Assembly: GCA_002269645.1 (NCBI GenBank) | Contig: NIVC01000020.1 | Span: 1,054,001 to 1,118,000 of the forward strand | Origin: Macrostomum lignano | Lineage: Eukaryota | Length of the DNA stretch: 64,000 nt | Direction: 5' to 3' | In this document: piece by piece, positions 1 to 64,000 of the stretch | How positions within the stretch are numbered: the stretch's first letter is position 1 | Layout of the letters: the number at the start of each line of letters is the position of its first letter | Notes under the pieces: model-generated | Databases searched by the model: none | What the model was told of the DNA's origin: nothing | Seen by the model: the letters and a program-made list of their open reading frames with translations, nothing else | Program-made: the position numbers and the translations under genes

Positions 1-41
1 TCTGTGTCCGCTCCGCAATTCAATTGTTTTTGCACTTCCAG

Positions 42-148
42 TTGTAGCCGAAAAATACTTTAAAGTGTACTTTAGCGCTGTGCTCAAACGAGATTATAAA
101 GTGCAGCACCAGCAGCGCATCTGCGACAAAGTGTTCCACCGCGTCCTG
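42..148 (+). CDS. Alternative (putatively mutually exclusive) exon E1 of C14orf93-like gene A
   Basis: Acceptor ttgcacttccag|, donor |gtaggt; 107 nt, phase 1->0; encodes xVAEKYFKVYFSAVLKRDYKVQHQQRICDKVFHRVL with no stops; homologous to E2-E5. Not in the ORF track. Confidence 0.8.
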
Positions 149-255
149 GTAGGTGTGCGCAGCTGATCAGCGCCCAGCACCTGCCCGCTACATTAGCCCG
201 ATTGGCGAGTGTTTGAAGATGCACAATTCCATGCATATAATGTGTATTGTTGCAG

Positions 256-350
256 AGCGGGCGCTGAGTTACTACTCGGGCTATTTCCGCTGCGTATTGC
301 GGCGCGATTATAGGCAGGATTATCTAAAGAATAGCTTCCATCGAATCTGG
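256..350 (+). CDS. Alternative exon E2 of gene A
   Basis: tattgttgcag| ... |gtacgt; 95 nt, phase 1->0; xRALSYYSGYFRCVLRRDYRQDYLKNSFHRIW aligns to E1 (YF..VL.RDY, FHR) with a 4-codon gap. Confidence 0.8.
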
Positions 351-419
351 GTACGTGTCTGCGCCCCGTGTAGCCAAACCCTACCGTGTCTGGCTCACAA
401 GATGCATACTCAGCAGCAG

Positions 420-606
420 CTAACCACCCCCCCCACTCACGCTGCCACAAGGGCCAAAAGTTTTGCATTCCATCGGTGATTGAGAAATGGGCGAAGGCTG
501 CGCTTCAGGGACAGGAACGTCAAAGTCTCCAGACACGAACCCCATCGAGCATGTCTGGCACTTCGTAAAGCGAAGAGTTCAGCAGCTGGTGTCTGGCAGA
601 ATGTGA
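420..606 (+). mobile_element. Degenerate Tc1/IS630-type transposase relic
   Basis: The frame starting at 526 reads SPDTNPIEHVWHFVKRRVQ, matching the Tc1 SPDLNPIExxW motif; a frameshifted QQQLTTPPTHAATRAK upstream resembles the QDNAPxH motif. No TIRs seen. Confidence 0.55.
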
Positions 607-896
607 TAATAGTACATTTGATTCTAGACAGGGCAATAGGGGCTCGGAAAATTCGGCGGGTTTTGTGGATAGGAGGCGATGATGAGAGTGGGGTAAGCAG
701 CACGGGTCTGGAATGATAGGGTTTGAGGGGCGATCGATATCAACAATGTGCATAGCATATTGAGTGAAGCGGGGCATTGGCAGACCAGGCTGTGTCCCTC
801 CATTCTGCCGCCGGCTCTCTGCAACGTCCCAGCCAATTTTTGTTGCTCCATTGTTTGTTAGGGGGCTGACTGACCCTGAACTGCCTGTTGTTGCAG

Positions 897-1003
897 GAGG
901 CTGCTCCGCCTACCTTAGCTCCTACTATCGCAGGTACCTAAAGTTTAAATATGTCAGCTCAGAGCGCAGCCAGCAGTGTCGGCACACGGTGCTCAGTCTT
1001 ATA
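897..1003 (+). CDS. Alternative exon E3 of gene A
   Basis: ctgttgttgcag| ... |gtaagt; 107 nt, phase 1->0; xGCSAYLSSYYRRYLKFKYVSSERSQQCRHTVLSLI. Confidence 0.8.
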
Positions 1004-1109
1004 GTAAGTTGCGCCTCCCCTGCCAGTTGGGGCTCGGGCGCCTGCAATGCTTCCCCTTGCACTTGGTTGAGAAAATCACTGCTAAGAAACTCCTTCCCCG
1101 CCCCTGCAG

Positions 1110-1216
1110 CCCAGTCGCTAAAGTACTTTGGCGGGCATTATCGCAAGAATCTGCAGTGCGCATTTAAGGTCAACAAGCGGCAGTCGGACACTCGAAGCAT
1201 TGTTCGGATTAGCCTG
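1110..1216 (+). CDS. Alternative exon E4 of gene A
   Basis: ccccgcccctgcag| ... |gtcagt; 107 nt, phase 1->0; xQSLKYFGGHYRKNLQCAFKVNKRQSDTRSIVRISL. Confidence 0.8.
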
Positions 1217-1332
1217 GTCAGTTAGTGCGTTTCCTGATTTGTTTGTTAGAGCTGATCGGCCCAGCAACTCTCGGAAAGGGCAGCTCTCACTGCGCTTGTC
1301 TAGGCTAATTCTGTGTTAGCAATTCTTTATAG

Positions 1333-1439
1333 AGGCCGGATTCAAGTACCTTGGCAGCTGGTTTAATAAGAATCTCAAGCGGGATTTTAAACAGCAGCAG
1401 CAGCAGAGCAAGCTGAACTCAATCTTTCTTGTGCAAACT
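1333..1439 (+). CDS. Alternative exon E5 of gene A
   Basis: aattctttatag| ... |gtgagt; 107 nt, phase 1->0; xAGFKYLGSWFNKNLKRDFKQQQQQSKLNSIFLVQT. Not in the ORF track. Confidence 0.8.
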
Positions 1440-1664
1440 GTGAGTGCGGACTCGGCTTTGCGCTGTGTTGTGGTGATGAATAGCAGTGAGCATTCGCACT
1501 GTCTGAGCAGGGGTGAGAGCCTGATTTGTCTGGTTCAGTTGTGTCTGCTGCTAAAGCTATTTTCCTTGTTTGAACTGCCGAGGGTAAGTCTATTGTGCGA
1601 CTCTCCCGGCTGCTCTATCCGCGTTCTGCCGAGAACTCTTGGTAACTGGCTTCTAATTTAGTAA

Positions 1665-2672
1665 ATCCCCATCCCACCAGCCCGAGAATCCCATCCCATC
1701 TACCTGAGAATCCCATCCCATCTCATCTACCTGAGAATCCCCATCCCATCACCCCGAGAATCCCATCTCACCTACCTGAGAATCCCCATCCCATCAGCCC
1801 AGGAATCCCATCTCATCTACCTGAGAATCCCATCCCATCTCACCTACCTGAGAATCCCCATCCCATCAGCCCAGGAATCCCATCTCACCTACCTAAGAGT
1901 CCCCATCCCACCAGCCCGAGAATCCCATCCCATCTACCTGAGAATCCCATCCCATCTCATCTACCTGAGAATCCCCATCCCATCACCCTGAGAATCCCAT
2001 CTCACCTACCTGAGAATCCCCATCCCATCAGCCCAGGAATCCCATCTCACCTACCTAAGAGTCCCCATCCCACCAGCCCGAGAATCCCATCTCATCTACC
2101 TGAGAATCCCATCCCATCTCACCTACCTGAGAATCCCCATCCCATCAGCCCAGGAATCCCATCTCACCTACCTAAGAGTCCCCATCCCACCAGCCCGAGA
2201 ATCCCATCTCATCTACCTGAGAATCCCATCCCATCTCACCTACCTGAGAATCCCCATCCCATCAGCCCAGGAATCCCATCTCACCTACCTAAGAGTCCCC
2301 ATCCCACCAGCCCGAGAATCCCATCCCATCTACCTGAGAATCCCATCCCATCTCATCTACCTGAGAATCCCCATCCCATCACCCTGAGAATCCCATCTCA
2401 CCTATTTGAGAAACTCCATCCCATCACCCCGAGAATCCCATCTCACCTACCTAAGAATCCCCATCCCATCAGCCCCAGAATCCCATCTCATCCAGTCCGA
2501 GAATCCCATCTCGTCCAGCCCGAGAATCCCATCTCATCCAGCCCCAGAATCCCATCTCATCCAGCCCCAGAATCCCATCTCATCCAGCCCCAGAATCCCA
2601 TCTAATCCAGGCCGAGCATCCCATCTCATCCAGTCCGATAATCCCATCTAATCCAGGCCGAGAATCCCATCC
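1665..2672. repeat. Intronic composite minisatellite (ccccatcccatc / cccgagaatcccatctcacctacctgagaat)
   Basis: Higher-order tandem repetition of ~19-22-bp subunits, ending just before the acceptor at 2698. Confidence 0.9.
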
Positions 2673-2698
2673 TGACCCGCCGGTCCCCGCCCCCGCAG

Positions 2699-3067
2699 AA
2701 GCTGAACCGGCGCCAGAAGAGCTACGAGGCCCTGAAGCCCAACCTCGACCAGACCGCCCAGACAAAATACGAGAGCGTGCTCAACAGGGACTACACCAGC
2801 TCGGATGAAGAAGGCGGTGCCGACTTGGACTCTGAGATGAAGGTGCGCAGCCTCCCTTGGGAGAGCGCCGAGCTGCGCGAGATGAAGCGTCGATTAGACG
2901 AAGTTTTCCTCGAACGCCTCGCCGACGACAAGCAGCGTGCGGACGTTTTGCGGCTGCAGCGGGACCCAGCTGTGCTGTCCAGCCGCCCGCCTCCCGCCGA
3001 CCAGCTCGACTGGGCGCGCGACCCAGCCTGGACGGCGTCTCATCCGCCTGGCGGCGCCACTCAATAA
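2699..3067 (+). CDS. Constant last exon of gene A (C14orf93/DUF4616-like C-terminal region)
   Basis: ccccgcag|AAG, phase 0; KLNRRQKSYEALKPNLDQTAQTKYESVLNRDYTSSDEE...KVRSLPWESAELREMKRRLD...SSRPPPADQLDW...stop. Clear paralog of 7006-7380. The family assignment is from recalled motif similarity (SxEE..VRxLxWxS..LD..SxRPPP), not from a search. Confidence 0.8.
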   Translation, partial: KLNRRQKSYEALKPNLDQTAQTKYESVLNRDYTSSDEEGGADLDSEMKVRSLPWESAELREMKRRLDEVFLERLADDKQRADVLRLQRDPAVLSSRPPPADQLDWARDPAWTASHPPGGATQ

Positions 3068-4067
3068 CTGAGACGGCGCCAAGGACTGCGGAGAACTGAC
3101 TTGACTCCTTCCCTACCCCTCCCCTTCATTTCATTTCCCCATCCCCTTATTTCCCCATCGCTCTTCATTTCCCCATCCCTTTTTCCTTATCCCCTCATTT
3201 GCTCATCTCTCTTCACTTCCCCAACCCCTCATTCCCCCTTCTAATGTCCTCATCATATTCTCATTTTCTGGCTACTGAAGATGGGGCGCTGCTCCCCCAG
3301 CTCATACAAATTCCATTGGCGGCTCTCCCCATTAAATTGCGCTGGCAGGATTGAGAAAATCGGTTGACTGGTCTGGATGTTTGTCCAGAGGAATTATTCC
3401 TAGCTAAGCTTTACTGTGACAAACCCTCCTTTGGCAAACTGATTTAACGAGACCAACTCAAAATTGAGAGTGCAGCGCCCTTCACTGCAGTAGAACCGGG
3501 CCCCTCACACCCCGTATGGTCGAATCCCTATTCACGAGTCGAGTATTGTATAATGTCAAGTCGCTCATTGCTGTGAACTGACTGCTTTTTAACACTGCCA
3601 CAAGCCCCCTAATTGTTTGCATTTTCCTCCCATTGTTCAACTGTAATTCTCCCCCAATGGTTGTCCGGCACATCCGCAACCTTTGGGTTCCGCTTGATCG
3701 CCCGGAGTCCGGGCGCATTTTCGCTTCTGTAATTCGCTTCCGCCCTGCCTGGCGGCTGATGTTCGTCTTTGCTTATTATAAATGATTACTGCTATGTATT
3801 TCATTACTGTCACTGTTCTGCTATTGACTATGCTGTGCTGTTGTGTTCTCAATCAGTTCTCAAATATACGGCCAGTCTATCATCTTAGCACCTGTATTTA
3901 CTCACCCGGTCACACTGCTCCGCTCTGTGACCACCGACTTGACAGTAAAGCAAGGATATGAATTTGTTGCAGAATTCCTCAGCAGTAAGTAGGCTTAATA
4001 CTACTTATTAATCCCTAGATAGCAGTCAGAGTCCAGAACCGATTCATGGCCAGTTTAAGCAACGCAA

Positions 4068-4432
4068 AACTGCTCAGTCAGAGGTTCGTTCGTTTTTATG
4101 ACCAACTGCTCAGTCACTGAGGTTCGTTGGTTTTGTCTATGACCAACTGCTCAGTCACTGAGGTTCGTTGGTTTTGTCTATGACCAACTGCTCAGTCACT
4201 GAGGTTCGTTGGTTTTGTCTATGACCAACTGCTCAGTCACTGAGGTTCGTTGGTTTTGTCTATGACCAACTGCTCAGTCACTGAGGTTCGTTGGTTTTGT
4301 CTATGACCAACTGCTCAGTCACTGAGATTCGTTGGTTTTGTCTATGACCAACTGCTCAGTCACTGAGGTTCGTTGGTTTTGTCTATGACCAACTGCTCAG
4401 TCACTGAGGTTCGTTGGTTTTGCCTATGACCA
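4068..4432. repeat. 41-bp minisatellite, ~9 copies
   Basis: Unit gaccaactgctcagtcactgaggttcgttggttttgtctat. Confidence 0.95.
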
Positions 4433-4594
4433 AATCTGACTCGTCTTAGCAAATTCCGCCAGTAATTCGCACTCAATATGCCCATGAGTAAAAGTAGGCC
4501 AGTAGAACTAGATGCATTTTTTGCATTGTGTGGATTTGTAGTCAGCTGTGTGTTGAAAACCATTTTTGCAGCAGACCGACTAGTTTGCCCAGCA

Positions 4595-7380
4595 ATGGCC
4601 GCCGCCGTCCTTCAGCACCAGCAGCAGCAGCAGCCGGCTTTCTCTACGCTGACCCTGTTCGAGTCCACCCTGATGAACGCGGGCATGCTGCTGGACAGCA
4701 TGACTCTGGACGACCTGTGCGCCGCGCTGCGCCTCATCAACAACCTGCACCTGCAGCTGGTGGACATCATGCAGCCCTCGGCCGCTGATGTGCAGCTCCG
4801 GCTCGTCCGCGCCGAGCACCGACTGGCCGAGGCGGCGCCGCTGCCGCTGCCTGTGCAGCAGCCGTCTGCGCAGGAGTCTGAGCCGCAGATCCCAGCAGAT
4901 CGGAAGCGGCCTCTGCAACATTCTGCTGAGGAATTCCGCGAGTCCAAGGTTCGCTTGGCTGACACTAACGGCGAGGCTGGCGGCGGCTGCGGCATTCTCG
5001 TTCACCAAGTCAACTCCGCCGACAACTTCAACGAGGCAGCTGACGATGAAGCGGCGCTCGTTGACGATTCGGAGTCTGCCGCGCACCGAACTGCCGGCTG
5101 TCCATCAATCTTGAGCTGCAGCGGCGGAGAATTTTCCAGCTCTGCCAACAACTGCTGGAGCGGCAACGTTCGGGTGAGCTGCTGGCCTGGCTAGTCTGAG
5201 CACTCTAGTCTGTGTCTGGGCACTCGTTAGTGTCTGAGCACTCTAGTCTGTGCCTGGGCACTCGTTAGTGTCTGAGCACTCTAGTCTGTGCCTGGGCACT
5301 CGTTAGTGTCTGAGCACTGTAGTCTGTGTCTGGGCACTCGTTAGTGTCTGAGCACTCTAGTCTGTGCCTGGGCACTCGTTAGTGTCTGAGCACTCTAGTC
5401 TGTGCCTGGGCACTCGTTAGTGTCTGAGCACTCTAGTCATTGTCTGGGCACTCGTTAGTGTCTGAGCACTCTAGTCTGTGCCTCGGCACTCGTTAGTGTC
5501 TGAGCACTCTAGTCATTGTCTGGGCACTCGTTAGTGTCTGAGCACTCTAGTCTGTGCCTCGGTACTCGTTAGTGTCTGAGCACTCTAGTCATTGTCTGGG
5601 CACTCGTTAGTGTCTGAGCACTCTAGTCTGTGCCTCGGCACTCGTTAGTGTCTGAGCACTCTAGTCATTGTCTGGGCACTCGTTAGTGTCTGAGCACTCT
5701 AGTCTGTGCTTGGGCACTCGTTAGTGTCTGAGCACTCTAGTCTGTGCCTGGGCACTCGTTAGTGTCTGAGCACTCTAGTCATTGTCTGGGCACTCGTTAG
5801 TGTCTGAGCACTCTAGTCTGTGCCTCGGCACTCGTTAGTGTCTGAGCACTCTAGTCTGTGTCTGTGCACTCGTTAGTGTCTGAGTACTGTAGTCTGTGTC
5901 TGGGCACTCGTTAGTGTCTGAGCACTGTAGTCTGTGTCTGGGCACTTTGTCTGGGCACTCGTTAGTGTCTGAGCACTCTAGTCTGTGTCTGTGCACTCGT
6001 TAGTGTCTGAGTACTTTAGTCTGTGTCTGGGCACTCTAGTTTGAGAGTTTCAGTTGAATGAAATCAAGCAGAAGCAGAAATTTGCCCACAGAACATACTG
6101 CAAGAGGCTTACAAGAAGCTCCGAGGCAGCGGTCCTCACTTGTTCGACTTCTCCAAGAGGTAGGGTGCGCGCCTAGTTGGCTACTCAATCAGTGCTCACT
6201 CAGCCACCTCCCCAAGCCCTGCAAGCCGCTTTCCCTTGCCGCCCTCAGCTGGGAGCACTCGGTCAATCAGGACGCGGCTCGCAGCGTCTTGGACTTGGTG
6301 AGGGATGAATCTGGCATCGAGGCCGACGAGGACACCTGGAAAAGTGAGTCTTTAGCCAGTCTTTATTGCTGCATTGCTTGCGCGACTCTCGAGTCAGTCA
6401 TAGTCAAACCGGAATGCCGCCCGCAGAGCTGTACCAGTACTACCTGCGGGAGAGCAAGCGGGTCCAGTGCAACAGGCGGACTGCCGCCCGCTGCAACCGG
6501 ATGAAGGCGGTGAGGCTTTTTGGAATACAGATTCTCATTTGTGTCCTTAACCGTGGTGCTAGCCAGAATTAGCCCCCATTAACTGAGAAAAATCGCCCCC
6601 CTACACCAATTGAGAATCGTCCGTGCACCTAGTGAGAATCGCCCCGTACACCTAGCGAGAATCGCCCCGTACACCTAGTGAGAATCGCCCCGTACACCTA
6701 GCGAGAATCGCCCGTGCACCTAGCGAGAATCGCCCCGTACACCTAGTGAGAATCGCCCCGTACACCTAGCGAGAATCGCCCCGTACACCTAGTGAGAATC
6801 GCCCCGTACACCTAGTGAGAACCGCCCCGTACACCTAGTGAGAATCGCCCCGTACACCTAGTGAGAATCGCCCCGTACACCTAGTGAGAATCGCCCCGTA
6901 CACCTAGTGAGAATCGCCCGTGCACCTAGTGAGAATCGCCCCGTACACCTAGTGAGAATCGCCCCGTACACCTAGTGAGAATCGCCAATCCCCATCGCAT
7001 CGCAGAAGCTCGGCCGGCGCCAGAAGGCATTCGAGTCTCTGCTGCCGCACCTGTCCCCAGACGAGCTCAACCAGTTCCGCGCCGTGCTGTCCCGGGATTT
7101 CACCTCCTCAGACGAGGAAGACGAGACCGCCTCAGGCAGCGGTGAGGCCGAGGACGAGCAGGCGAATCTGCGGGTGCGCAGCCTGGTGTGGGAATCCGCC
7201 GCCGTCGCCGACATCAAGCGCCGCCTGGATGACACCTTCTATGCCCGCTTCGCCACCGTCAAGCAGCGCGCCCAGCTCGCCCGCTGCCAGCGTTTCGACG
7301 GCGCTGAAAGCAACCGGGGGCCGCCCCCGGGAGCTCCTGACTGGGCCGTCCGCTCCGATCCCACCAGCTCCGCGTTTTGA
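4595..7380 (+). CDS. Gene B: 5-exon C14orf93/DUF4616-like protein, paralog of gene A
   Basis: Exons 4595-5173, 6092-6159, 6249-6343, 6427-6509, 7006-7380; all GT-AG and phase-compatible (0,2,1,0). Spliced product ...GNVR|NILQEAYKKLRGSGPHLFDFSK|SWEHSVNQDAARSVLDLVRDESGIEADEDTWK|KLYQYYLRESKRVQCNRRTAARCNRMKA|KLGRRQKAF...RDFTSSDEE...VRSLVWES...LDD...SNRGPPPGAPDW. Confidence 0.85.
5192..6040. repeat. 38-bp intronic minisatellite, ~22 copies
   Basis: Unit gtctgagcactctagtctgtgcctgggcactcgttagt; fills intron 1 of gene B. Confidence 0.95.
6611..6986. repeat. 23-bp intronic minisatellite, ~16 copies
   Basis: Unit gagaatcgccccgtacacctagt; in intron 4 of gene B. Confidence 0.95.
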
Positions 7381-7935
7381 GTCTCCCCCTCCCGTCTGAG
7401 TCTCCCCCTCCCGTCTGAGTCTCCCCTCATCTGAGTCTCCCCCTCCCGTCTGAGTCTCCCCTCATCTGAGTCTCCCCCCTCCCATCTGAGTCTCCCCTCA
7501 TCTGAGTCTCCCCCTCCCGTCTGAGTCTCCCCTCATCTGAGTCTCCCCTCTCCCATCTGAGTCTCCCCTCATCTGAGTCTCCCCCTCCCGTCTGAGTCTC
7601 CCCTCATCTGAGTCTCCCCCCTCCCATCTGAGTCTCCCCCCTCCCATCTGAGTCTCCCCCCTCCCATCTGAGTCTCCCCCCTCCCATCTGAGTCTCCCCT
7701 CATCTGAGTCTCCCCCTCCCATCTGAGTCTCCCCTCATCTGAGTCTCCCCCCTCCCGTCTGAGTCTCCCCCTCCCGTCTGAGTCTCCCCCTCCAGTCTGA
7801 GTCTCCCCCTCCAGTCTGAGTCTCCCCCTATCCGAGTCTCCCCCTCCCGTCTGAATCTCTCCCCCCTCCAGTCTGAGTCTCCCCCATCTGAGTCTCCGCC
7901 TCCCATCTGAGTCTCCCCCGTCTGAATCTCTCCCC
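7378..7935. repeat. ~19-bp minisatellite beginning at the gene B stop codon
   Basis: Unit ctgagtctccccctcccgt and variants; the first copy overlaps the TGA at 7378-7380. Confidence 0.9.
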
Positions 7936-9030: not shown

Positions 9031-9387
9031 TGCGCAGGTACACGACTGCAGTTTCATCAAAGTTGCACCATATTTTTATCATAGTTTTCTCAGAGTTATG
9101 GCGAAAAATGCAACAGATAAGAATAGCTGAAATTTAACTGTGCTTAGGTAGCGGTCTTTTACTTTGTTAAAGAAACTTGACTATTTTCATATCTAAAAAA
9201 ATTGAAAGAAGCCATGCTTCTCGCCTTTGCATTTTGCAACTGGAAAGATCTGCGAGTATGGCGTCTTTGTGCTTCGGTTGTATACTGTATGCATTAAAGT
9301 TATCTGCCTTTGTAATATTGTGTAAACTTGAAACACAACATTAATTTCTATTGCCCTGCCATTAGTTTTAGCGATACTGTATGCGTA

Positions 9388-10990
9388 ATACCACCAAATC
9401 TAAGCGCAATTCCACCGAATCCAAGCGCAATACCACCAAATTTAAGCGCGATTCCACCGAATCCAAGCACAATACCACCAAATCTAAGCGCAATTCCACC
9501 GAATCCAAGCGCAATACCACCAAATCTAAGCGCGATTCCACCGAATCCAAGCGCAATACCACCAAATCTAAGCGCGATTCCACCGAATCCAAGCGCAATA
9601 CCACCAAATCTAAGCGCGATTCCACCGAATCCAAGCACAATACCACCAAATCTAAGCGCAATTCCACCGAATCCAAGCGCAATACCACCAAATCTAAGCG
9701 CAATTCCACCGAATCCAAGCGCAATACCACCAAATCGAGGTAAAAGTCCATCAAATCTAAGCGCATTACCACCAAATCGAGGCGAAGGTCCATCAAATCT
9801 AAGCGCAATACCACCAAATCGAGGCAAAAGTTCATCAAATCTAAGCGCAATATCACCAAATCGAGGCAAAAGTTCATCAAATCTAAGCGCAATACCACCA
9901 AATCGAGGCGAAGGTCCATCAAATCTAAGCGCAATACCACCAAATCGAGGCAAAAGTTCATCAAATCTAAGCGCAATATCACCAAATCGAGGCGAAGGTC
10001 CATCAAATCTAAGCGCAATACCACCAAATCGAGGCGAAGGTCCATCAAATCTAAGCGCAATACCACCAAATCGAGGCGAAGGTCCATCAAATCTAAGCAC
10101 AATACCACCAAATCGAGGCAAAAGTCCACAAGATCTAAGCGCAATACCACCAAATCGAGGCAAAAGTCCGCAAGATCTAAGCGCAATACCACCAAATCGA
10201 GGCAAAAGTCCACAAGATCTAAGCGCAATACCACCAAATCGAGGCAAAAGTCAACTAAATCTAAGCGCGAGTCCACCAACTCTAAGCGCAATTCCACCCA
10301 GTAAGCGCAATTCCACCCAGTGTAAGCGCAATTCCACCCAGTGTAAGCGCAATTCCACCTAGTATAAGCGCAATTCCACCCAGTAAGCGCAATTCCACCC
10401 AGTGTAAGCGCAATTCCACCCAGTAAGCGCAATTCAACCCAGTGTAAGCGCAATTCCACCCAGTGTAAGCGCAATTCCACCCAGTGTAAGCCCAATTCCA
10501 CCAAATATAAGCGGAATTCAACACAGTGTAAGCGCGATTCCACCAAATCTAAGCGGAATTCAATCCAGTGTAAGCGCAATTCCACCCAGTGTAAGCGCAA
10601 TTCCACCAAATCTAAGCGCAACTCCACCCAGTGTAAGCGCAATTCCACCAAATCTAAGCGGAATTCAATCCAGTGTAAGCGCAACTCCACCCAGTGTAAG
10701 CGCAATTCCACCAAATCTAAGCGCAACTCCACCCAGTGTAAGCGCAATTCCACCAAATATAAGCCCAATTCCACCCAGTGTAAGCGCAATTCCATCTAGT
10801 AAAAGCGCAATTCCACCCATTAAGCGCAATTCCACCCAGTGTAAGCGCAATTCCACCAAATCTAAGCGCAATTCCACCTAATCTAAGCCCAATTCCACCC
10901 AGTGTAAGCGCAATTCCACCCAGTGTAAGCGCAATTCCACCCAGTGTAAGCGCAATTCCACCAAATCTAAGCACAATTCCACCATACCAC
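9388..10990. repeat. 21/39-bp evolving minisatellite array
   Basis: Units aagcgcaattccaccgaatcc / aagcgcaataccaccaaatct, then 39-bp and 21-bp derivatives; explains the spurious long ORFs at 9328-10998. Confidence 0.95.
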
Positions 10991-29807: not shown

Positions 29808-30171
29808 TTTATTAGAGGCAGGGGGGTTGTGTGCACCCTGGCGCACTTTAAGCGACATTGGCACACAACCGGCGAGAGGCATTACTGCCCATTCCGCCGA
29901 CTCCCCTGAGCAGGCATACAAGCGCGCGGATACGTTACGCAGACACACACTCACACAGGAGTGTACAGCGGCCCTAACTCTATTTTATTGTTAGGCATGT
30001 ACACTTCACTGCGCCTTGGGGGGGGGGGGTTGACTCTCAAGGCCGTTAATTGCACGAGCAGAGCCAAGCCGAGATTCCAATTCAGCCCCAAATTAATGTG
30101 ACTGCACTTGGAATCGAGCCTGGGTCGCTGGCACACCAGAGCAGCTGCGCTACCGCTGGACTACGGCCCCC
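29808..30171 (-). mobile_element. tRNA-headed SINE (second family)
   Basis: Minus-strand head gggggccgtagtccagcggtagcgcagctgctctggtgtgccagcgacccaggctcgattcc (A/B boxes); ~360 bp; ends aataaa against the 14-bp TSD; the head is duplicated at 36234-36295. Confidence 0.7.
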
Positions 30172-33100
30172 ATTCTGCACCACCCATAGCATCCATGAAA
30201 CTCGTACAAAGAATCTCACATGCAAAGACCTCCCACCCAAAAACCTCCCATCGATAAAATCCCCGATCCGAATTATTCCCCATTCAAGGAATCCTCCTAT
30301 CTGAAGAATTGCCCATCCATAGAATCTTACATGCAGAGAATCCCCATCCAAAGAACCCCCTCCGATAGAATCCCCGATACGAAGAATTCCCCATCCAATG
30401 AATCCCCTATTCAAGGAATCCCCCATCGACAGAATCCCCTATCCAAAGAATCCCCCTATGCATCCCTATCCAAAGAATCTCCCCATGCATCTATATCCAA
30501 AGAATTCCCGACCTCCATCCATATCCAAAACCCCCCTCCAAAGAATCCCAATTCAAATAATCCCCATCCACAGAATCCCGATCAAAATAATGCAAAGATT
30601 CTCTCATCCAAATAAACCTCCATCAAAAGAATCATTGGCCAAAGAGTCCCCTCATCTAAAGAACCCTGTCCAAATAATTTAAAGAATCCGACTCCAAATA
30701 ATCCCCATCCACAGAATCCCCATCAAAAGAATCCAAAGAATCTCCCATTCCAAATAATCCCCCCATCAATAGAATCCTAGGCCAAAGAATCCCCTCATCT
30801 AAAGAATCCCCGTCCAAATAATCCCATATCCAAAGGATCCCTTTATCGAAAGAATCCTTCATCTAAAGAATCCCCCATCGAAGGAATTTCGCAATGAATC
30901 GCCTATCTAAAGATTTCCATTAGAAGCAGCCCTCATGGAAAGAATCCCCAATACATAGAATTCCGCCCCCCCCCCAAGACTTGACATCTCAGCAATTCCG
31001 GCGCAAGCCTTGACACCTCAGCAATTCTCTCTTAAGCTTTGACATCTCAGCAATTCACTCTCAAGACTTGAAATTTCTGGAATTCCCCCTCAAGACTTTA
31101 CGTCTCCTAAATTCCCCCTTAAGCCTTGACATCTTAGCAATTCCCCCTAAAAGCCTTTATTATATCTCAGTGATTCCCCCAGTGAGTCTTCACACCTTAG
31201 CAATTTCTCCCCGCCCTGACATCTCAGAGATTTCCCCCACAACTTGACATCTCAGAAATCCCTCCACGCCTTGAAATCTCAGCGATTTCCTCCTAAGCCT
31301 TGGCATCTCAGCAAGTCCCTTTTAAGCCTTGACATCTCAGTAATTCCCCCAGTAAGCCTGAATATCTTAATAATTCCCCAGTAAGTCAAAGTCTTGACAT
31401 ATCAGGAATTTCCCTACGTCTTGACATCTCAGCAATTCTCTCTTAAGCCTTGGCATATCAGTAATTCCATCAGTAAGCATTTATATCAGTGATTCCCCAG
31501 TGAGTCTTGACATCTTAGCAATCTCCCCCGAGCAAGCATTCCCAAGAGCAAGCGTCCTTCCGATAGCAAGCATCCCCTGATAGAAAGTACCCCAAGCGAG
31601 ATAGTAAAACAATTTCCTCAGCTAGTACAATAATTAATGTCTTATCTAGTGCAATAATCCTTTTCAAAATTGAAAGTTTCATAAAAAATTTTGAATATAC
31701 TACATGAACGCTCGTAGCTTCTTCTCTTTTGCCTGATTTACCTGACGTTTTTAAAGTTTGCTTTAACTGTCTTGAAATTAAAATTGTTAATAAAAAAACT
31801 TTTACACTCTAAAAATTCGAACCCACGTCGCTGCATTAGCAGTTCAGTCTGTTCACCTCTAGGCTAGCTCTCATCGTTTTGATAACATGAATTGTAGCAC
31901 ATATATAATTCAACACTGAAAACTCCAAGCATAGAGTAGAAATCACTCGAAGCAAGTTATGACATAATCAATATCTCAGGCAGTCAATATCAGTTTCAAT
32001 TAATGAAGTCAACAATTATAGTCAACAATGTAGTTACGCAATCTAAATTGAAATCTAATGGCGCTGGCTTGAATTGTGGAGTTGCGATAAAGTAGGGGTT
32101 TGCGATATGGGAGAGCAATGAGTATATAAAGTAAAAAGCATAGAAATCTTCTTTTCAATGCTGTGCTTTTAATTTGTCAAATCTCAGCAAACAAATTATA
32201 TTCCCAAACTCAGCGTTCCTAGCTCTTTCCAGCAATACAAGGCTCTTTTCTGAAAGTGGAAAACTCGAAGCACAAACAACGATTAAACATTTCTGCTTGA
32301 AAGCAGTCAAATTAATAAGGTGTACATTCAGCGCCAGCTACAGTGAGAGGCCTGCAAGTTGATGCATTGAAATTAAAAACCAAGCCAATGCCCAGGACTA
32401 ATTGAATAGCGACACCCGCCCCTCAATTCAATAACTAAAATGTGTTGCGCAACTTTTTAACGCTTGTAGCTGTCCACGCGAGTGTAGAGAACCAATGCTA
32501 TAGTCGGCACTGAGTTATGATGCAATACAATTCCATCGGCAGTCAGAACGCTTCTCAATCGGAAAAAAACTGTTTGAACTTAAAAAAACGGGCAAAAAAA
32601 TCGAGTTTTTCGAATATTTAATCCCTAAAAAATGAAGCTATTTCTTAGCAAAATTTTGTGTACCAGCGCACAATCAATACGCATCGAATGCAGAAAACCC
32701 CGCAAAATTCCGACCACGCAAAGTCAAGTTAAACGAAGTTTCCTATAGATAGGTACATAGTTTTGATTTTTAGTATATTGGACTAGCCAATTCCAACCCC
32801 CGTTGGGGCTTTCCGTCCAAACTCCAATCACAGTTTTCCCACGCAATAAAATTTCACCCAACTGAATCCCCCATCCAAAGAATCCTTCATCCAAAAAATC
32901 CCCCATCTATAAAATCTCTGATGCAAAGAATCTCACATGCAAAGAATTCCCTATCCAAAGAATCCTCCATCTAAAGAACCCCCATCGATAGAATCCACTC
33001 TATTCCCCACCCCACACAATCCACACAATTCCCCACTCAAGGAATCCTCCTATCTGAAGAATTCCCCATCCAATTAATCGCCCATCCATAGAACCTCACA

Positions 33101-36100
33101 TGCACATCCATCCAAATAATTCACATCATAATCCCCATCTAAATAATCCCCCATCAAAGAAATAATTGGCCAAAGGATTCCCTCATCTAAAGAACCCCGT
33201 CCGAATAATCCCCATCCAAAGTATCCAAAGAATCTCCCATCCAAATAATCCCCCTATTAATAGAATTCTTGGTCAAAGAATCCCCTCATCTAAAGAACCC
33301 CCGTCCAAATAACCCCCCATCTAACGAATCCTTCATCTAAAGAATCAACCATTCGAAAAACCCTCCATCGAAACAATGCCCCATCAAATGAATTCCCTAA
33401 AGAATCACCCATCCAAAGATATCTATTAAAAGCATCCCTCATCCAAAGAATCATCAATCCATATAATTCCCCCCAAGACTTAACATCTCAGCGATTCCTC
33501 CAAAGCCTTGACATCTCAGCAGTTCCCCATTAAGCCTTGAAATCTCAGCAATTCCCCTCCCCAAGACTTAACATCTTATAAATTTCCCCTTAAGCCTTGA
33601 CATCTCAGCGATTCCCCCCCCCACAAGCCTTGCATCTCAGCAAGTCCCTCTTAAGCCTTCACATCTCATTAATTCCCCTAGGTAAGATTTTATACATGTA
33701 TTTCAATAATTCCTCCTGTAAATCTTGACATCTTAGAATTCTCTTCCGAGCAAGCATCCCCCCAAGAGCAAGCGTCCTTCCGATAGCAAGCATCCCCTGA
33801 TAGAAAGTACTCCCACCAAGATTAGTGAAACAATTTCCTCAGCTAGCCAATTCCAACCCCCGTTGGGGCTATCCGGCTATTCGTCCAAACTCCAACCACA
33901 GTTTTTCCACGCAATAAAATTTCACCCAACTGAATCTCAAATTTAAAGAATCCCCCTTCCAAAGAATCCACCACCCATAGAATCCACGATACAAAGAATC
34001 TCACATGCAAAGAATCCGCCATCCAAAAACCTCCCATCGATAGAATCCCCGATCCGAAGAATTCCCCCTTCAATGAATCCTCCTATCTTAATAATTGCCC
34101 ATGCATAGAATCTTACATGCAGAGAATCCCCATCCAAAGAACCCCCATCGATAGAATCCCCGATCCGAAGAATTCCCCTTCCAATTAATCCCCCATCGAC
34201 AAAATCCCCTATCCAAAGAATCCCCCCATCCATCCCTATCCAAAGAATCCCCCCATCCATCCCTATCCATCCCTATCCCCCCATCCATCCCTATCCAAAG
34301 AATCCCCCCATCCATCCGTATCCAAAGAATCCCCGACCTCCATCCATATCCAAAAAATCCCCCTCCAAAAAATCCCAATCCAAATAATCCCCATCCACAG
34401 AATCCCGATCAAAATAATGCAAAGATTCACTCATCCAAATAAACCTCCATCAAAAGAATCATTGAATCTGAAGAATCTGAATCTGAGTCCCCTCATCTAA
34501 AGAACCCCGTCCAAATAATCCAAAGAATCAGACTCCAAATAATCTCCATCCAAAGAATCCAAAGAATCTCCCATCCAAATAAAACCCCATCAATAAAATC
34601 CTAGGCCGAAGAATCCCCTCATCTAAAGAATCCTCGTCCAAACAATCCCATCAAATCCAAAGGATCCCTTTATCGAAAGAATCCTTCATCTAAAGAATCC
34701 CCCACATTCAAAGAGCCCTCCATCGAAAGAATCCCCCATCGAAGGAATTTCCCAATGAATCACCTATCTAAAGATATCCATTGGAAGCAGCCCTCATGGA
34801 AGGAATCCCCAATCCATAGAATCCCCCCCAGACTTGTCATCTCAACAATTCCCCCCAAGCCTTGAGACCTCAGTAATTCTCTCTTAAGCTTTGACATCTC
34901 AGCAATTTGCTCTCAAGACTTGAAATTTCAGGAATTCCCCCGCCAAGACTTGACGTCTCATAAATTTTCCTTAAGCTTTGACATCTCAGCAGTCCTCCAA
35001 GTAAGCCTTTATATCGCAGTAATTCCCCAGTAAGTCTGCATATCTGAATAATTCCCCAGTGAGTCTTGACATCTTAGCAATCTCACCCGATCAAGCATGC
35101 CCTAAGAGCAAGCGTCCTTTCGATAGCAAGCATCCCCTGATAGAAAGTAACCCAAGCAAGATAGTAAACAATTTACTCAGCTAGTACAATAATTAGTTTC
35201 TTATCTAGTGCAATAATCCTTTTCAAAATTCAAAGTTTATTAAAAAAATTTGAATATACTACATTAACGCTCGTAGCTTCTTCTCTTTTACCTGATTTAC
35301 CGGACGTTTTTTAAAGTTAAAATTTTTAATAAAAAAACTTTTACTCTCTAAAAATTCGAACCCACGTCGCTGCATTAGCAGTTCAGTCTGTTCACATCTA
35401 GGCTAACTCATCGTTTTGATAACATGAATTGCAGCACATATATAATTCAACACTGAAAACTCCAAGAATAGAGTAGAAATCACTCGAAGCAAGTTATGAC
35501 ATAATCAATTTCTCAGGCAGGCAATATCAGTTTCAATTATTAAAGTCAACAATATAGTTACGCAATCTAAATTTAAATACAATGGCTTGAATTGCGGAGT
35601 TGCGATAAAGTAAAGGTTTGCGATATGGAAGAGCGTACAATGAGTATATAAAGTAAAATTCACAGGAATCTTCTTTTTAATGCTGTGTTTTTCATTTTTC
35701 GAATCTCAGAAAACAAATTATATTCCCGAACTCAGCGTTCCTAGCTCTTTCCAGCATAACAAGGTTCTCTTCTGAAAGTGAAAAACTCATAGCGCAAACA
35801 ACGATTGAACATTCCTGCTTTAAAGCATTCAAATTCATAAGGTGTACATTCAGCGCCAGCTACTGTGAGAGGCATGCAAGTTGATGCATTGAAATTAACA
35901 ACCAAGCCAAATTGAATGGCGAAACCCTCCCCCCAATTTCAATAACTTAAAGATGTTGCGCAACCTTTCAACGCTTGTAGCTCTCCACGCGAGTGTAGAG
36001 AACCAATGCTATAGTTGGCACTGAGTTATGATGCAATACAATTCCATGGGCAGTCAGAACGCTTCTCAATCGGAAAAAAACTGTTTGAACTTAAAAAAAC

Positions 36101-55441: not shown

Positions 55442-58400
55442 TCACAGGTTCGGCGGCACAAGGTCTGACAGGCGCGGCTTGGACACAAACCAGGCGGTGC
55501 GGTGGCGCAGGTCCTTGCGCAGCATTTTCTCCTCCTCTGGCGAGCAGTGCAGCAGGGCGGACAGCGCCCGCACCAGGTGCTGCGCCTCGTCCTCGCGGGT
55601 CAGCAGGAACTTCAGCAGCACGTGCTTCAGGTACAGCAGGTTCACCAGTTCGCCCTCCGCCGATTCAAGCCCGCCTGCGCCGCCGCCGTTCGTTGAATCT
55701 TCGTCTGTGGCGGCAGCGGCGGTAGCGGCAGCGGGATCCGATGCGGCCGGTTCGTTGGGGAGGCGCGGGCACGGCTGCTGCTGCAGACGGAGCTCCCGCT
55801 GCAGCGTCTTCTTCATGTCCAGCAGCCGCTGCTGCAGCACCCGGACGGTTTTGTTCCGCTCCGCTAGCTGGTCGCCAAGGCTCTGCACTTCCTGACGCAG
55901 GGCGCGGACGCTCTCCGTCTCCAGGCTCACCACGACCGTCTCGCGCTCCCGCTCCAGCTCCGTCACCCGCTCCGCCAGCTCGCTGTTGGTCAGCGCCGCC
56001 GTCTCCGCCTGGCTCTCCAGCGAGGCGAGCTCCGCCCGCAGCGACTCCGCCTCCGACTGGTGCGCCGCCGTAGCTGCCCGCGCCTCTGACTCGGCAGCTG
56101 ACAGTCGCTGCTCCAGCGACAGCTTCTCTGCGGGCCGGAGGTTCGGGTTCGCTGATTCTCAGACAGGAAGCTTCGGGCTCTTGCTGTTACCTACTGCCGG
56201 ACTCTCTCCTTCCCCTGACTGCTGGACTCCCCCTTTCCCCTGACCGCCGGACTCACCTCCCTTTCCTTGGCTGCTGGACTCTCCTTCCTTTCCTTGACTG
56301 CCGGACTCACCTCCCTTTCCTTGACTGCTGGACTCTCCTCCCTTTCCTTGACTGCCGGACTCAACTCCCTTTCCTTGACTGCCGGACTCTCCTCCCTTTC
56401 CTTGACTGCCGGACTCTCCTACCTTTCCTTGACTGCTGGACTCTCCTCCCTTTCCTTGACTGCCGGACTCTCCTACCTTTCCTTGACTGCCGGACTCTCC
56501 TCCCTTTCCTTGACTGCCGAACTCACCTCCCTTTCCTTGACTGCCGAACTCACCTCCCTTTCCTTGACTGCCGAACTCACCTCCCTTTCCTTGACTGCCG
56601 GACTCTCCTACCTTTCCTTGACTGCTGGACTCTCCTCCCTTTCCTTGACTGCCGGACTCTCCTACCTTTCCTTGACTGCCGGACTCTCCTACCTTTCCTT
56701 GACTGCCGGACTCTCCTTCCTTTCCTTGACTGCCGGACTCTCCTACCTTTCCTTGACTGCCGGACTCTCCTACCTTTCCTTGACTGCCGGACTCTCCTCC
56801 CTTTCCTTGACTGCCGGACTCTCCTACCTTTCCTTGACTGCCGGACTCTCCTCCCTTTCCTTGACTGCCGGACTCTCCTACCTTTCCTTGATTGCCGGAC
56901 TCTCCTCCCTTTCCTTGACTGCCGGACTCTCCTACCTTTCCTTGACTGCCGGACTCTCCTCCCTCTCCTTGACTGCCGGACTCTCCTACCTTTCCTTGAC
57001 TGCCAGACTCCCCTCCCTTTCCTTGACTGCCGGACTCTCCTCCCTTTCCTTGACTGCCGGACTCCCCTCCCTTTCCCCTGACCGCCGGACTCTCCTCCCT
57101 TTCCTTGACTGCCGGACTCTCCTTCATTTCCTTGACTGCCGGACTCCCCTCCCTTTCCCCTGACCGCCGGACTCCCCCCTTTCCTTGACTGCCAGACTCC
57201 CCTCCCTTTCCCCTGACCGCCGGACTCCCCCCTTTCCTTGACTGCCGGACTCTCCTCTCCTACAGATTCTGTAGAACCACCACAGGTTTGTGTAAGTCCT
57301 TTCCGTCTTAAATTTTTGCTTGGGTGCCGAATCGGATATGCAGACGCCAAGGGGAATAAATCGGAGCAAATCAATTTCGTTGACAAGTTTACCTGGCCTC
57401 AGACTCACCCATCCTACCTGATTAATTTAGACTAATAAAACTCACTCTAATTTAATTACTCAAATTCATAATTAAAATGCCAATTCCACTATCCCTCATC
57501 CCCAGCTGTTTCCGCAAAACCGGCATCCAGCAGCAGCCGCCCCTCACCGGACTGCAGCTTCTCCGCCTCCGCCTGCGCCGCTCCGGCCTCCCGCTTGGCC
57601 GCCTGCAGTTTCCGCTGCAGATCCCGCAGCTCGGCGGCGCTGCTGTCCTTCAGCGAGGCCAGCTCCGTGACGCGCAGGTCCTGGTTGAAGCGGTCGGACC
57701 GCAGTCGGTCGATGTCCGAGTTCAGCGTCTGGACCTCCTCCTAGGGGCGGATAGGAGGGCGCTGTAGGATGAAAAACTTTGTAGGATGGCTTCAAAATCT
57801 CCCCCTTAGACTTGGAAATTTCACTTCTTTAATCTGAAATCTCACCCTTCGATTTCGGGTCTTACTCTCAGATTTTAAATCTTACCTTTAACTGCAGAAT
57901 CTTACCCCTCGGATTCATAATCTCACCCTCAGATTCAGAATCCTACCCTCAGATTTAGAATCTCACCCTCGGATTCATAATCTCACCCTCAGATTCATAA
58001 TCTCACCCTCAGATTCATAATCTCACCCTCGGATTCATAATTTCACCCTCAGGTTCAGAATCCTACCTTCAGATTCATAATCTCACCCTCGGATTCATAA
58101 TCTCACCTTCAGATTCAGAATCCTACCTTCAGATTCATAATCTCACCCTCGGATTCATAATCTCACCTTCAGATTCATAATCTCACCTTCAGATTCATAA
58201 TCTCACCCTCGGATTCATAATCTCACCTTCAGATTCATAATCTCACCTTCAGATTCATAATCTCACCCTCGGATTCAGAACCGCACTGCCAGTGAGTCAG
58301 ATTTTCAGTCTCTGTTTTGCAATGCAAGCCAAATCGCGTGGACTCATTAAACTTCGCACATTCAACATCGGAATCCCATGATCAACTCCGAGAGCACCAG

Positions 58401-61688: not shown

Positions 61689-61699
61689 CTGTGGGGATC

Positions 61700-63708: not shown

Positions 63709-64000
63709 CAAGGAAATTTTTATAAACCGCTCCCCTAATTCCAAGGGTTAGGGGAAATCCACCGGTGATCCGCGGGATAATCATTGTGTTCCCCATCGCC
63801 TGGGAAGCCGCTATTACGCGCGATGAAATGCTAAACTGAAAATAAAGATGCTGCAAGCAACGACATTAATTTATTGGTATTAAAATCTAGCATTTGAGAA
63901 ATTAAACAACAATCAGACACCCCGCGAGTACTGCTCAGGGCTGGCGGATCTTTGAGTGCAATCGGACTAATTTAACACAAGGTAATAATGGAGTGCGTAT

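What the first reader, a model, noticed from the sequence alone, without database searches (positions are those of the whole stretch)
42..3067. Dscam-like tandem array of mutually exclusive exons diversifying one helix of a C14orf93-like protein
Seen: five homologous exon-like units at 42-148, 256-350, 897-1003, 1110-1216 and 1333-1439. Each is bounded by a pyrimidine-rich AG and a GT donor and is phase 1->0. Four are exactly 107 nt, one is 95 nt. Aligned: xVAEKYFKVYFSAVLKRDYKVQHQQRICDKVFHRVL / xRALSYYSGYFRCVLRRDYRQDY----LKNSFHRIW / xGCSAYLSSYYRRYLKFKYVSSERSQQCRHTVLSLI / xQSLKYFGGHYRKNLQCAFKVNKRQSDTRSIVRISL / xAGFKYLGSWFNKNLKRDFKQQQQQSKLNSIFLVQT. Y6, aromatic 10/11, L15 and aromatic 19 are invariant while the other positions vary strongly. 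Any one unit splices in frame to the constant last exon (2699, phase 0); two together would frameshift. The neighbouring paralog (gene B) has exactly one phase 1->0 exon at this position. The array runs to the window edge, so it may be larger. Inference: a mutually exclusive splicing cassette swaps a basic/aromatic amphipathic helix, possibly a nucleic-acid or partner recognition helix, giving a family of specificity variants from one locus. I know of no description of such an array in this protein family.
Basis: partly seen in the sequence, partly recalled or inferred. Interest (0 to 1): 0.93.

Follow-up and report, generated by a model that had tools for sequence, protein, structure and literature searches.

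The report
Alternative-exon array in a flatworm gene
A gene of the flatworm Macrostomum lignano carries seven tandem copies of one small exon, only one of which can be used per intact protein. Each copy would give a different version of one long helix, but only one copy has transcript support so far.

Summary
The window is Macrostomum lignano contig NIVC01000020.1. The five units are AG/GT-bounded, open in one frame only, and all phase 1->0. Two more units lie just upstream of the window, making seven in gene BOX15_Mlig034464g3.

Any single unit gives an intact protein of 402-410 aa. Every double or triple inclusion, and skipping all units, destroys the reading frame.

Four older paralogs carry their own arrays of 3-6 units. 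Several units resemble a unit in another paralog more than their own neighbours. Between such pairs pN is 0.22-0.35 while synonymous sites are saturated. Two near-identical copies of the locus keep all seven units intact. The units are therefore conserved coding exons, not decayed duplicates.

Starfish and acorn-worm homologs have one 110-nt exon of the same phase at this position. AlphaFold2 puts the unit in the middle of a 56-60-residue helix.

The C14orf93 kinship is remote: hhalign gives 86% probability and Pfam gives no hit. No Dscam-type docking or selector pairing and no steric block was found, so exclusivity most likely rests on frame incompatibility.

Only the last unit has transcript-derived support. 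One-at-a-time splicing remains an inference. This is a new member of a known kind.

The parts
42..148 (+). Alternative exon unit U1, third of seven in the array. 107 nt, phase 1->0. Encodes VAEKYFKVYFSAVLKRDYKVQHQQRICDKVFHRVL.
   Evidence: AG/GTAGGT boundaries and a single open frame. Unit HMM E 5e-15. Closest relative is unit L005.2 in a paralog.
256..350 (+). Alternative exon unit U2. 95 nt, phase 1->0, four codons shorter than the modal length.
   Evidence: AG/GTACGT boundaries and a single open frame. The 101-nt candidate with the next in-phase donor (256-356) scored HMM E 6e-12; the 95-nt exon ends at the GTACGT donor. Gives an intact 402-aa ORF.
351..896 (+). The one long inter-unit intron (546 nt). 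It contains a dead Tc1/mariner-type transposase fragment at about 523-585.
   Evidence: Translates to SPDTNPIEHVWHFVKRRV. Pfam DDE_3 E 2e-4, below the family cut-off. The other five inter-unit introns are 106-121 nt.
897..1003 (+). Alternative exon unit U3. 107 nt, phase 1->0.
   Evidence: AG/GTAAGT boundaries and a single open frame. HMM E 5e-13.
1110..1216 (+). Alternative exon unit U4. 107 nt, phase 1->0, of the 'GGHY.KNL' type.
   Evidence: It is 57% identical in protein to unit L004.2 of a paralog. Alignment score is 106 against 54 for its best neighbour. pN 0.30 with pS saturated.
1333..1439 (+). Alternative exon unit U5, last of the array. 107 nt, phase 1->0. This is the unit used in the annotated protein.
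   Evidence: P0009 (BOX15_Mlig034464g3, 406 aa) reads ...SAWRKAGFKYLGSWFNKNLKRDFKQQQQQSKLNSIFLVQTKLNRRQK.... The annotation derives from an RNA-seq-guided transcriptome assembly (PMC5730564). Related units L005.5 and L003.3 score 98 and 90.
1440..2698 (+). Last intron of gene A (1259 nt). Most of it is a 23-nt minisatellite at 1664-2672.
   Evidence: The repeat is about 75% complementary to a 23-nt minisatellite upstream of the array (L001 4816-4969). No function is shown.
2699..3067 (+). Constant last coding exon of gene A. It starts in phase 0 with KLNRRQKSYEAL... and includes the stop codon.
   Evidence: Translation. Identical to P0009 residues 285-406. 45% identical to gene B's last exon at 7006-7374.
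4595..7380 (+). Gene B (BOX15_Mlig034464g4), a downstream paralog with five coding exons at 4595-5173, 6092-6159, 6249-6343, 6427-6509 and 7006-7380.
   Evidence: The spliced ORF is 399 aa. It is 100% identical to P0001.
6427..6509 (+). Gene B's single exon at the array position. 83 nt, phase 1->0.
   Evidence: No second candidate lies between exon 3 and the last exon apart from minisatellite artefacts.

Best explanation
The region is the 3' part of a Macrostomum lignano gene, BOX15_Mlig034464g3. An ancestral penultimate exon of about 110 nt has been tandemly duplicated into seven divergent copies, five of them inside the window.

Each mRNA that encodes a full protein must carry exactly one copy, spliced between exon 2 (which ends in phase 1) and the last exon (which starts in phase 0). 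The copies supply alternative versions of the middle 31-39 residues of one long helix in the conserved C-terminal domain.

A conserved stripe is kept in every copy: Tyr5, aromatics at 9 and 10, Leu14, Lys/Arg15 and an aromatic at 18. The strongly basic remainder differs between copies. The likely result is isoforms with different binding properties.

Exclusivity is most likely enforced by reading-frame incompatibility. All unit lengths are 2 mod 3, and every unit carries a stop codon in the frame read after another unit. Nonsense-mediated decay probably removes such transcripts, and regulated splice-site choice selects the unit. A Dscam-type RNA docking mechanism is not indicated.

Shown here: the exon anatomy, the frame logic, conservation and purifying selection, and the predicted helix. 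Inferred: use of units other than U5, decay of multi-unit transcripts, and any change in specificity.
For: Anatomy
- Seven AG/GT units, each open in one frame only, all phase 1->0.
- Any single unit gives an intact ORF of 402-410 aa.
- All 21 double inclusions put a stop codon 23-101 nt upstream of the last exon junction. None of 35 triple inclusions is intact. Skipping all units shifts the frame.

Transcript support
- The transcript-derived annotation joins exon 2, U5 and the last exon.
- That pipeline kept only dominant isoforms (TACO --isoform-frac 0.75, PMC5730564). The absence of other isoforms from the annotation is therefore uninformative.

Conservation
- Four paralogs, 45-56% identical to gene A in BLASTP local alignments, have arrays of 6, 3, 3 and 6 units at the same position.
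- Several units match a unit in another paralog better than their own neighbours. Examples are U4 with L004.2 (106 against 54) and U5 with L005.5 (98 against 54).
- For such pairs pN is 0.22-0.35 and pS is 0.74-1.0, while flanking introns are at background identity.
- Two near-identical copies of the locus keep all seven units. They show 2 substitutions in 1,498 unit nt, both synonymous, against 27 in 4,234 intron nt (Fisher p 0.018). There are no indels in the units.
- The homologous exon in Patiria and Glandiceps is single, 110 nt and phase 1->0.

Structure
- In the AF2 models the unit lies inside helix 244-299 of P0009 (35-aa unit) and helix 241-300 of P0012 (39-aa unit). pLDDT is about 87-98.
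- Unit lengths step mostly by 12 nt (95, 107, 119), which is four residues or about one helical turn.
- Across 25 units Tyr5 is invariant and Leu14 is present in 23.
Against: - No RNA evidence was obtainable for units other than U5 in this gene. The protein databases hold no isoform with another unit correctly spliced.
- Some UniProt gene models (P0010, P0171) chain several units in frame through internal splice sites. They look like ab initio artefacts, but they show that in-frame multi-unit products are formally possible.
- In the two duplicate loci the annotated transcript ends by read-through just after exon 2 (P0170). A truncated product may be a common output.
- For pairs ending in U5 the premature stop lies only 23 nt before the last junction. 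That is closer than the roughly 50-nt distance usually taken as needed for junction-dependent decay (my knowledge, not tested here).
- No cis element that would explain regulated choice was found.
- The protein's function is unknown, with no Pfam hit and no PDB fold match.
Confidence: 0.7

Rival explanations
1. Only one unit (U5) is a working exon. The other six are silent leftovers of tandem duplication that happen still to look like exons.
For: The only transcript-derived model uses U5. No database protein shows another unit of this gene cleanly spliced.
Against: - All seven units keep one open frame, AG/GT sites and a length of 2 mod 3.
- Unit types are shared with arrays in paralogs whose synonymous sites are saturated, yet pN stays at 0.22-0.35.
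- Units carry fewer substitutions than introns, and no indels, in the recent duplicates.
- In other paralogs the transcript-derived model uses the first unit (L003, P0012) or the fourth (L002, P0011), not the last.
Confidence: 0.1
2. The units are alternative exons, but their main role is to control dosage. Inclusion of the wrong number of units yields unproductive transcripts that are degraded, and protein diversity is a by-product.
For: Every multi-unit or zero-unit product is out of frame or carries a stop codon. A truncated read-through product is annotated in the duplicate loci.
Against: Dosage control needs only stop codons, not conserved peptides. Amino-acid conservation of individual unit types across paralogs and the conserved helix stripe point to selection on the encoded protein.
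Confidence: 0.1
3. Several units are joined in one mRNA through internal splice sites, giving a protein with a repeated or extended helix, as in gene models P0010 and P0171.
For: UniProt models P0010 (Ua + part of Ub + extended U1) and P0171 (five units or partial units) are open reading frames.
Against: These models need internal acceptors inside units and intron sequence read as coding. They come from the older assembly's gene set, whose other models here are visibly fused or broken (for example P0002, P0004, P0007). The transcript-guided annotation gives a single unit. Homologs in other phyla have one exon.
Confidence: 0.05

Closest known systems
Clusters of mutually exclusive exons whose joint inclusion breaks the reading frame, as catalogued for human by Hatje et al. 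2017 (PMC5740500)
   Same: Tandem homologous exons of similar length and the same phase. Lengths are not divisible by three, so combined inclusion gives a premature stop. The exons replace a secondary-structure element rather than a loop.
   Different: There are seven exons here, while most such clusters have two. The gene family is uncharacterised, the animal is a flatworm, and parallel arrays sit in at least four paralogs. Junction-read validation, which that study required, is missing here.
Drosophila Dscam1 exon 4, 6 and 9 clusters (from my knowledge; cited as the large-cluster example in PMC5740500)
   Same: A large tandem array of divergent copies of one exon. Variant types are conserved between related arrays. 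One protein segment is diversified.
   Different: No docking site or selector complementarity was found. The array is far smaller. The diversified element is part of a helix in an intracellular-looking protein, not an Ig domain half.
Human C14orf93 / RTFC (Pfam DUF4616)
   Same: hhalign aligns 179 columns, family positions 182-383 to C14orf93 residues 302-485, at 86% probability. The alignment places C14orf93 '...KGACVAYFLTKRREYR...' opposite the variable unit, and the SDEE acidic stretch and following region opposite the last exon.
   Different: The Pfam DUF4616 model does not hit the flatworm proteins or their invertebrate relatives. Aligned identity is 12%. The N-terminal halves are unrelated. 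No exon array is known to me for C14orf93.
Homologous single-exon genes in Patiria miniata (XP_038047259.1) and Glandiceps talaboti (XP_078001082.1)
   Same: Same family by profile search (E 1.8e-17 and 3.1e-19). Same penultimate exon of 110 nt, phase 1->0, encoding 'A.K.YF.S..D...R', followed by a KLxRRQ-type last exon.
   Different: There is one exon at this position, not an array.

Membership tests
Cluster of mutually exclusive exons (tandem-duplicated exon substitution) | Neighbouring exons of similar length with detectable sequence homology | tested here: met
   Seven units of 95-119 nt, five of them 107 nt. HMM E-values run from 6e-12 to 8e-17. The control set of 9,489 candidate exons gave no hit outside the arrays and the single homologous exon of two neighbouring family genes.
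Cluster of mutually exclusive exons (tandem-duplicated exon substitution) | Same reading-frame phase and canonical splice sites for every member | tested here: met
   All units are AG...GT, phase 1->0, and open in one frame only.
Cluster of mutually exclusive exons (tandem-duplicated exon substitution) | Splice-junction reads from each member to both flanking constant exons | not testable with these tools
   Only U5 is in a transcript-derived model. No read data or transcript assemblies of this species could be searched.
Cluster of mutually exclusive exons (tandem-duplicated exon substitution) | No productive joint inclusion: either no exon-joining reads, or a frameshift when members are joined | tested here: met
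   The frame criterion is met in silico. All 21 doubles and all 35 triples carry premature stops, and skipping all units shifts the frame. Reads were not testable.
Dscam-type competing RNA structures (docking site and selectors) | One intronic docking sequence complementary to a selector next to each variable exon | tested here: not met
   No 12-16-nt window of either flanking intron pairs with more than 2 of the 6 inter-unit introns, the same as in shuffled controls. No 7-mer is shared by four or more introns. Weak or long-range structures are not excluded.
Steric-hindrance mutually exclusive exons | Intron between the alternative exons too short to be spliced (donor to branch point under about 50 nt) | tested here: not met
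   Inter-unit introns are 106-121 nt and one is 546 nt. The gene B model has 83- and 89-nt introns, and P0001 confirms that splicing.
U2/U12 spliceosome incompatibility | Alternating U12-type (AT-AC or /RTATCCTT) and U2-type splice sites | tested here: not met
   All donors are GT[AGC][ACG]G-type and all acceptors are pyrimidine-rich AG. There is no U12 donor consensus.
C14orf93 / DUF4616 (PF15394) | Match to the Pfam model above its gathering score | tested here: not met
   No DUF4616 hit for gene A or gene B at E<=1, nor at E<=0.01 for ten wider family members. The model is present in the library.
C14orf93 / DUF4616 (PF15394) | Remote homology detectable by profile comparison | tested here: inconclusive
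   hhalign gives probability 86%, E 5e-6, 179 columns and 12% identity.

The most novel reading that the evidence does not exclude
Macrostomum has turned one ancient exon of a metazoan-wide, functionally unknown protein family (distantly related to C14orf93) into arrays of alternative exons in several paralogs. At least 25 variant exons of about 107 nt lie in five genes, and four 77-nt variants lie in a gene of a further subfamily. Each is used one at a time. Together they would form a sizeable repertoire of recognition-helix variants maintained by selection. I know of no other large multi-gene system of mutually exclusive exons in flatworms.
Probability: 0.5. Interest if true: 0.7.

Novelty: new member of a known kind. 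Interest (0 to 1): 0.6.

Why it matters
Clusters of five or more mutually exclusive exons are best known from arthropods. Hatje et al. 2017 report that most human clusters have two exons (PMC5740500). My literature searches found no description of such clusters in Macrostomum or of this gene family's exon arrays.

Here the same exon has been expanded in parallel or ancestrally in several paralogs, and individual variant types have been kept under purifying selection. That points to a real need for helix variants in a conserved animal protein family whose function is unknown, including its distant human relative C14orf93. The variable segment marks the part of the protein most likely to make a specific contact, which gives a handle for experiments.

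The finding also has a practical side. Current M. lignano annotations either keep one unit or chain several wrongly. This family is therefore mis-annotated.

Tried and rejected
- **Pfam.** Scans of gene A, gene B and ten wider family members gave no family assignment.
- **PDB fold search.** The confident AF2 model gave nothing below E 3.5. A weak resemblance to the Zeste Myb/SANT-like DNA-binding domain (probability 0.10) is not evidence.
- **Docking and selector search.** Three approaches all gave background results:
  - Inverted repeats.
  - Shared intron k-mers.
  - A gapless pairing scan with shuffled controls.
- **RNAduplex.** The upstream minisatellite was tested against each inter-unit intron. 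Two of seven were nominally low (p 0.03 and 0.06). I rejected this as not robust, and the statistic is poor for long sequences.
- **Other isoforms in protein databases.** None was found. The collection appears to hold no transcript-assembly proteins for this gene.
- **UniProt models that use other units.** I considered P0016 and P0018 as isoform evidence, then down-weighted them. Sister models P0010 and P0171 are clearly chained predictions.
- **dN/dS between paralogous units.** dS is saturated, so only pN against pS is reported.
- **Literature.** Searches for the gene identifiers and for mutually exclusive exons in Macrostomum found nothing relevant.
- **Phage search.** A megablast of the long intron against phages was irrelevant and empty.
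- **Separate truncated gene copies.** Rejected, because no upstream-exon homologs lie between the units.
Full report
**1. What and where**

The window is from the free-living flatworm Macrostomum lignano. Gene B of the window is 100% identical to BOX15_Mlig034464g4 (P0001). The surrounding DNA was retrieved as locus L001 from contig NIVC01000020.1 of assembly GCA_002269645.1. Window position 1 equals L001 position 5428, and the sequences are identical over 17 kb.

**2. Check of the observation**

Each is AG/GT-bounded and open only in the frame that corresponds to phase 1->0. Lengths are 107, 95, 107, 107 and 107 nt.
- The last exon runs from 2699 to 3067 and starts in phase 0.
- Gene B splices cleanly into a 399-aa ORF from five exons. 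It has one 83-nt phase 1->0 exon at the equivalent position, 6427-6509.
- A unit HMM was scored against 9,489 AG..GT phase-compatible candidate exons from both strands of five loci and the full window. At E<0.01 it recovered only the array units and the single equivalent exon of two neighbouring family genes. The similarity is therefore not chance.

**3. The complete gene**

Upstream of the window lie these parts:

| Part | L001 coordinates | Note |
|---|---|---|
| Exon 1 | 3075-3311 | |
| Exon 2 | 3702-4209 | ends in phase 1 |
| Unit Ua | 5010-5116 | 107 nt |
| Unit Ub | 5238-5356 | 119 nt |

- The array therefore has seven members.
- Exon 1, exon 2, any one unit and the last exon give an intact ORF of 402-410 aa.
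- The annotated gene at L001 3075-8494 is 406 aa. Its protein P0009 (BOX15_Mlig034464g3) uses U5.
- That annotation derives from an RNA-seq-guided StringTie/TACO assembly. It kept only isoforms at 75% or more of the major one (PMC5730564). U5 inclusion is therefore transcript-supported, and the lack of other annotated isoforms says little.

**4. Frame logic**

- All unit lengths are 2 mod 3.
- All 21 two-unit combinations give a premature stop inside the second unit, 23-101 nt upstream of the last exon junction.
- None of the 35 three-unit combinations is open.
- Skipping all units shifts the frame.

Only single inclusion encodes the conserved C-terminal domain.

**5. Are the units functional exons?**

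*Paralogous arrays.* Four paralogous genes, 45-56% identical to gene A in BLASTP local alignments, were fetched. Each has its own array between the '...AW' exon and the 'KLNRRQK' last exon.

| Locus | Gene | Units |
|---|---|---|
| L002 | Mlig012439g1 | 6 |
| L003 | Mlig004600g1 | 3 |
| L004 | Mlig028318g1 | 3 |
| L005 | Mlig023559g2 | 6 |

*Shared unit types.* Several units are closer to a unit in another paralog than to their own neighbours.

| Unit | Best match in another locus (score) | Best neighbour (score) |
|---|---|---|
| U4 | L004.2 (106) | 54 |
| U5 | L005.5 (98), L003.3 (90) | 54 |
| Ub | L003.2 (75) | 55 |

A 'TLKP' type always comes first where it is present, which is in every array except L002. 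Diversification therefore predates the gene duplications.

*Selection.*
- For such pairs pN is 0.22-0.35 while pS is 0.74-1.0, which is saturated. Flanking introns align at background level.
- Two near-identical copies of the whole locus, L007 and L008, keep all seven units.
- Those copies show 2 substitutions in 1,498 unit nt, both synonymous third positions, against 27 in 4,234 intron nt. Fisher p is 0.018. The units carry no indels.

Old and recent constraint both argue against dead pseudo-exons.

**6. Origin**

A profile of the family found 576 proteins at E<=1e-3. They include proteins from an acorn worm, a starfish and a mussel, all unnamed. In Patiria and Glandiceps the homologous segment is one separate 110-nt exon, phase 1->0, directly before the 'KLxRRQ' exon. 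The flatworm arrays are thus expansions of an ancient discrete exon.

**7. Protein context**

- AlphaFold2 with a 47-sequence alignment gives a confident C-terminal domain, with pLDDT above 90 for most of residues 185-400.
- The unit, residues 249-284, lies in the middle of one helix spanning 244-299.
- P0012 carries a 39-aa unit and shows helix 241-300, four residues longer.
- Unit lengths differ mostly by 12 nt (95, 107, 119), which is four residues or about one helical turn.
- Across 25 units:
  - Tyr5 is invariant.
  - Positions 9 and 10 are aromatic in 24.
  - Leu14 is present in 23.
  - Lys/Arg15 is present in 24.
  - Position 18 is Tyr or Phe in 17.
  - Positions 20 onward vary freely.
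  - Net charge is +4 to +8.
- This fits a helix anchored by one conserved face, with a variable, basic and probably exposed remainder. That last step is inference.
- No PDB fold match and no Pfam family were found.

**8. C14orf93**

The Pfam DUF4616 model does not hit these proteins. Pfam confirmed it as a full-length DUF4616 member at 1014 bits. hhalign of the family alignment against it gave 86% probability, E 5e-6 and 179 columns, with the variable unit opposite 'KGACVAYFLTKRREYR'. This is remote kinship, not membership.

**9. Mechanism of exclusivity**

- Dscam-type docking and selector pairing was sought in three ways and not found.
- Inter-unit introns are 106-121 nt. One is 546 nt because it holds a Tc1/mariner fragment.
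- The gene B model has 83- and 89-nt introns, so steric hindrance is unlikely.
- All splice sites are U2-type.
- Of the mechanisms listed in PMC5740500, frame incompatibility with decay of multi-unit transcripts is the one the sequence supports.

**10. Caveats**

- There is no direct RNA evidence for six of the seven units.
- UniProt models P0010 and P0171 chain units through internal sites and look like prediction artefacts.
- The duplicate loci are annotated with a truncated read-through product, P0170.
- For pairs ending in U5 the premature stop is only 23 nt from the last junction.

**11. Verdict**

This is a genuine, conserved seven-member array of alternative exons, and very probably used one at a time. 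It is a new member of the known class of tandem-duplicated mutually exclusive exon clusters, in an uncharacterised animal protein family. It is interesting but awaits transcript confirmation.

Noticed in passing
L006 10255-10331, 10543-10619, 12142-12218, 12410-12486 (contig NIVC01001693.1): Another subfamily of the same protein family (the P0023 gene) has its own array of four 77-nt units at the same gene position. They are phase 1->0 with AG/GTAAG boundaries. Exon arrays are therefore a recurring trait of this family in M. lignano.
   Followed up: partly
window 351-896 (core about 523-585): A dead Tc1/mariner-type transposase fragment (SPDTNPIEHVWHFVKRRV; Pfam DDE_3 E 2e-4, below cut-off) sits in the only long inter-unit intron. 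It explains why that intron is 546 nt while the others are 106-121 nt.
   Followed up: yes
L001 4816-4969 (upstream of the window) and window 1664-2672: 23-nt minisatellites flank the exon array in opposite orientation and are about 75% complementary. The upstream one is GGGGAATTCTCGCTCAGCTGGCA x6.7 and the downstream one is CCCATCTCATCCAGCCCGAGAAT x43. Pairing between them would loop out the whole array. The window is full of minisatellites, so this may be coincidence.
   Followed up: partly
whole window, e.g. 4068-4433, 5194-5946, 6591-6986, 7378-7919, 9383-10984, 60143-61241, 61701-63709: The window is very dense in 15-43-nt minisatellites, many inside introns and UTRs. Most long bacterial-style ORFs here, such as 61120-63738 (872 aa), are artefacts of these repeats.
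   Followed up: partly
L007 (NIVC01000858.1) and L008 (NIVC01004034.1): Two further copies of the gene A locus are 96-98% identical in the longest BLASTN blocks (substitutions in non-repeat intron only 0.5-0.8%). Their annotated product (P0170, 264 aa) ends by read-through into intron 2. This suggests either a truncated isoform or an annotation cut.
   Followed up: partly
window 1-7380 and loci L002-L005: An array-bearing gene is followed directly by another family gene in L001-L003 and L005, shown to be a single-exon B-type gene only in L001 (the L004 downstream gene was not identified), and L004 and L005 have a further family gene upstream. Gene names g3 and g4 of Mlig034464 indicate one transcriptional unit, which may be a polycistronic trans-spliced precursor.
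   Followed up: no
window 56162-57127 (minus strand): This ORF matches the collagen triple-helix repeat (Pfam E 3e-22). It coincides with a 27-nt minisatellite at 56193-57257. It could be a real collagen-like gene or a repeat artefact.
   Followed up: no
window 30001-36000: A stretch with strong negative GC skew (about -0.37) and positive AT skew at about 40-43% GC, unlike its surroundings. It was not examined.
   Followed up: no
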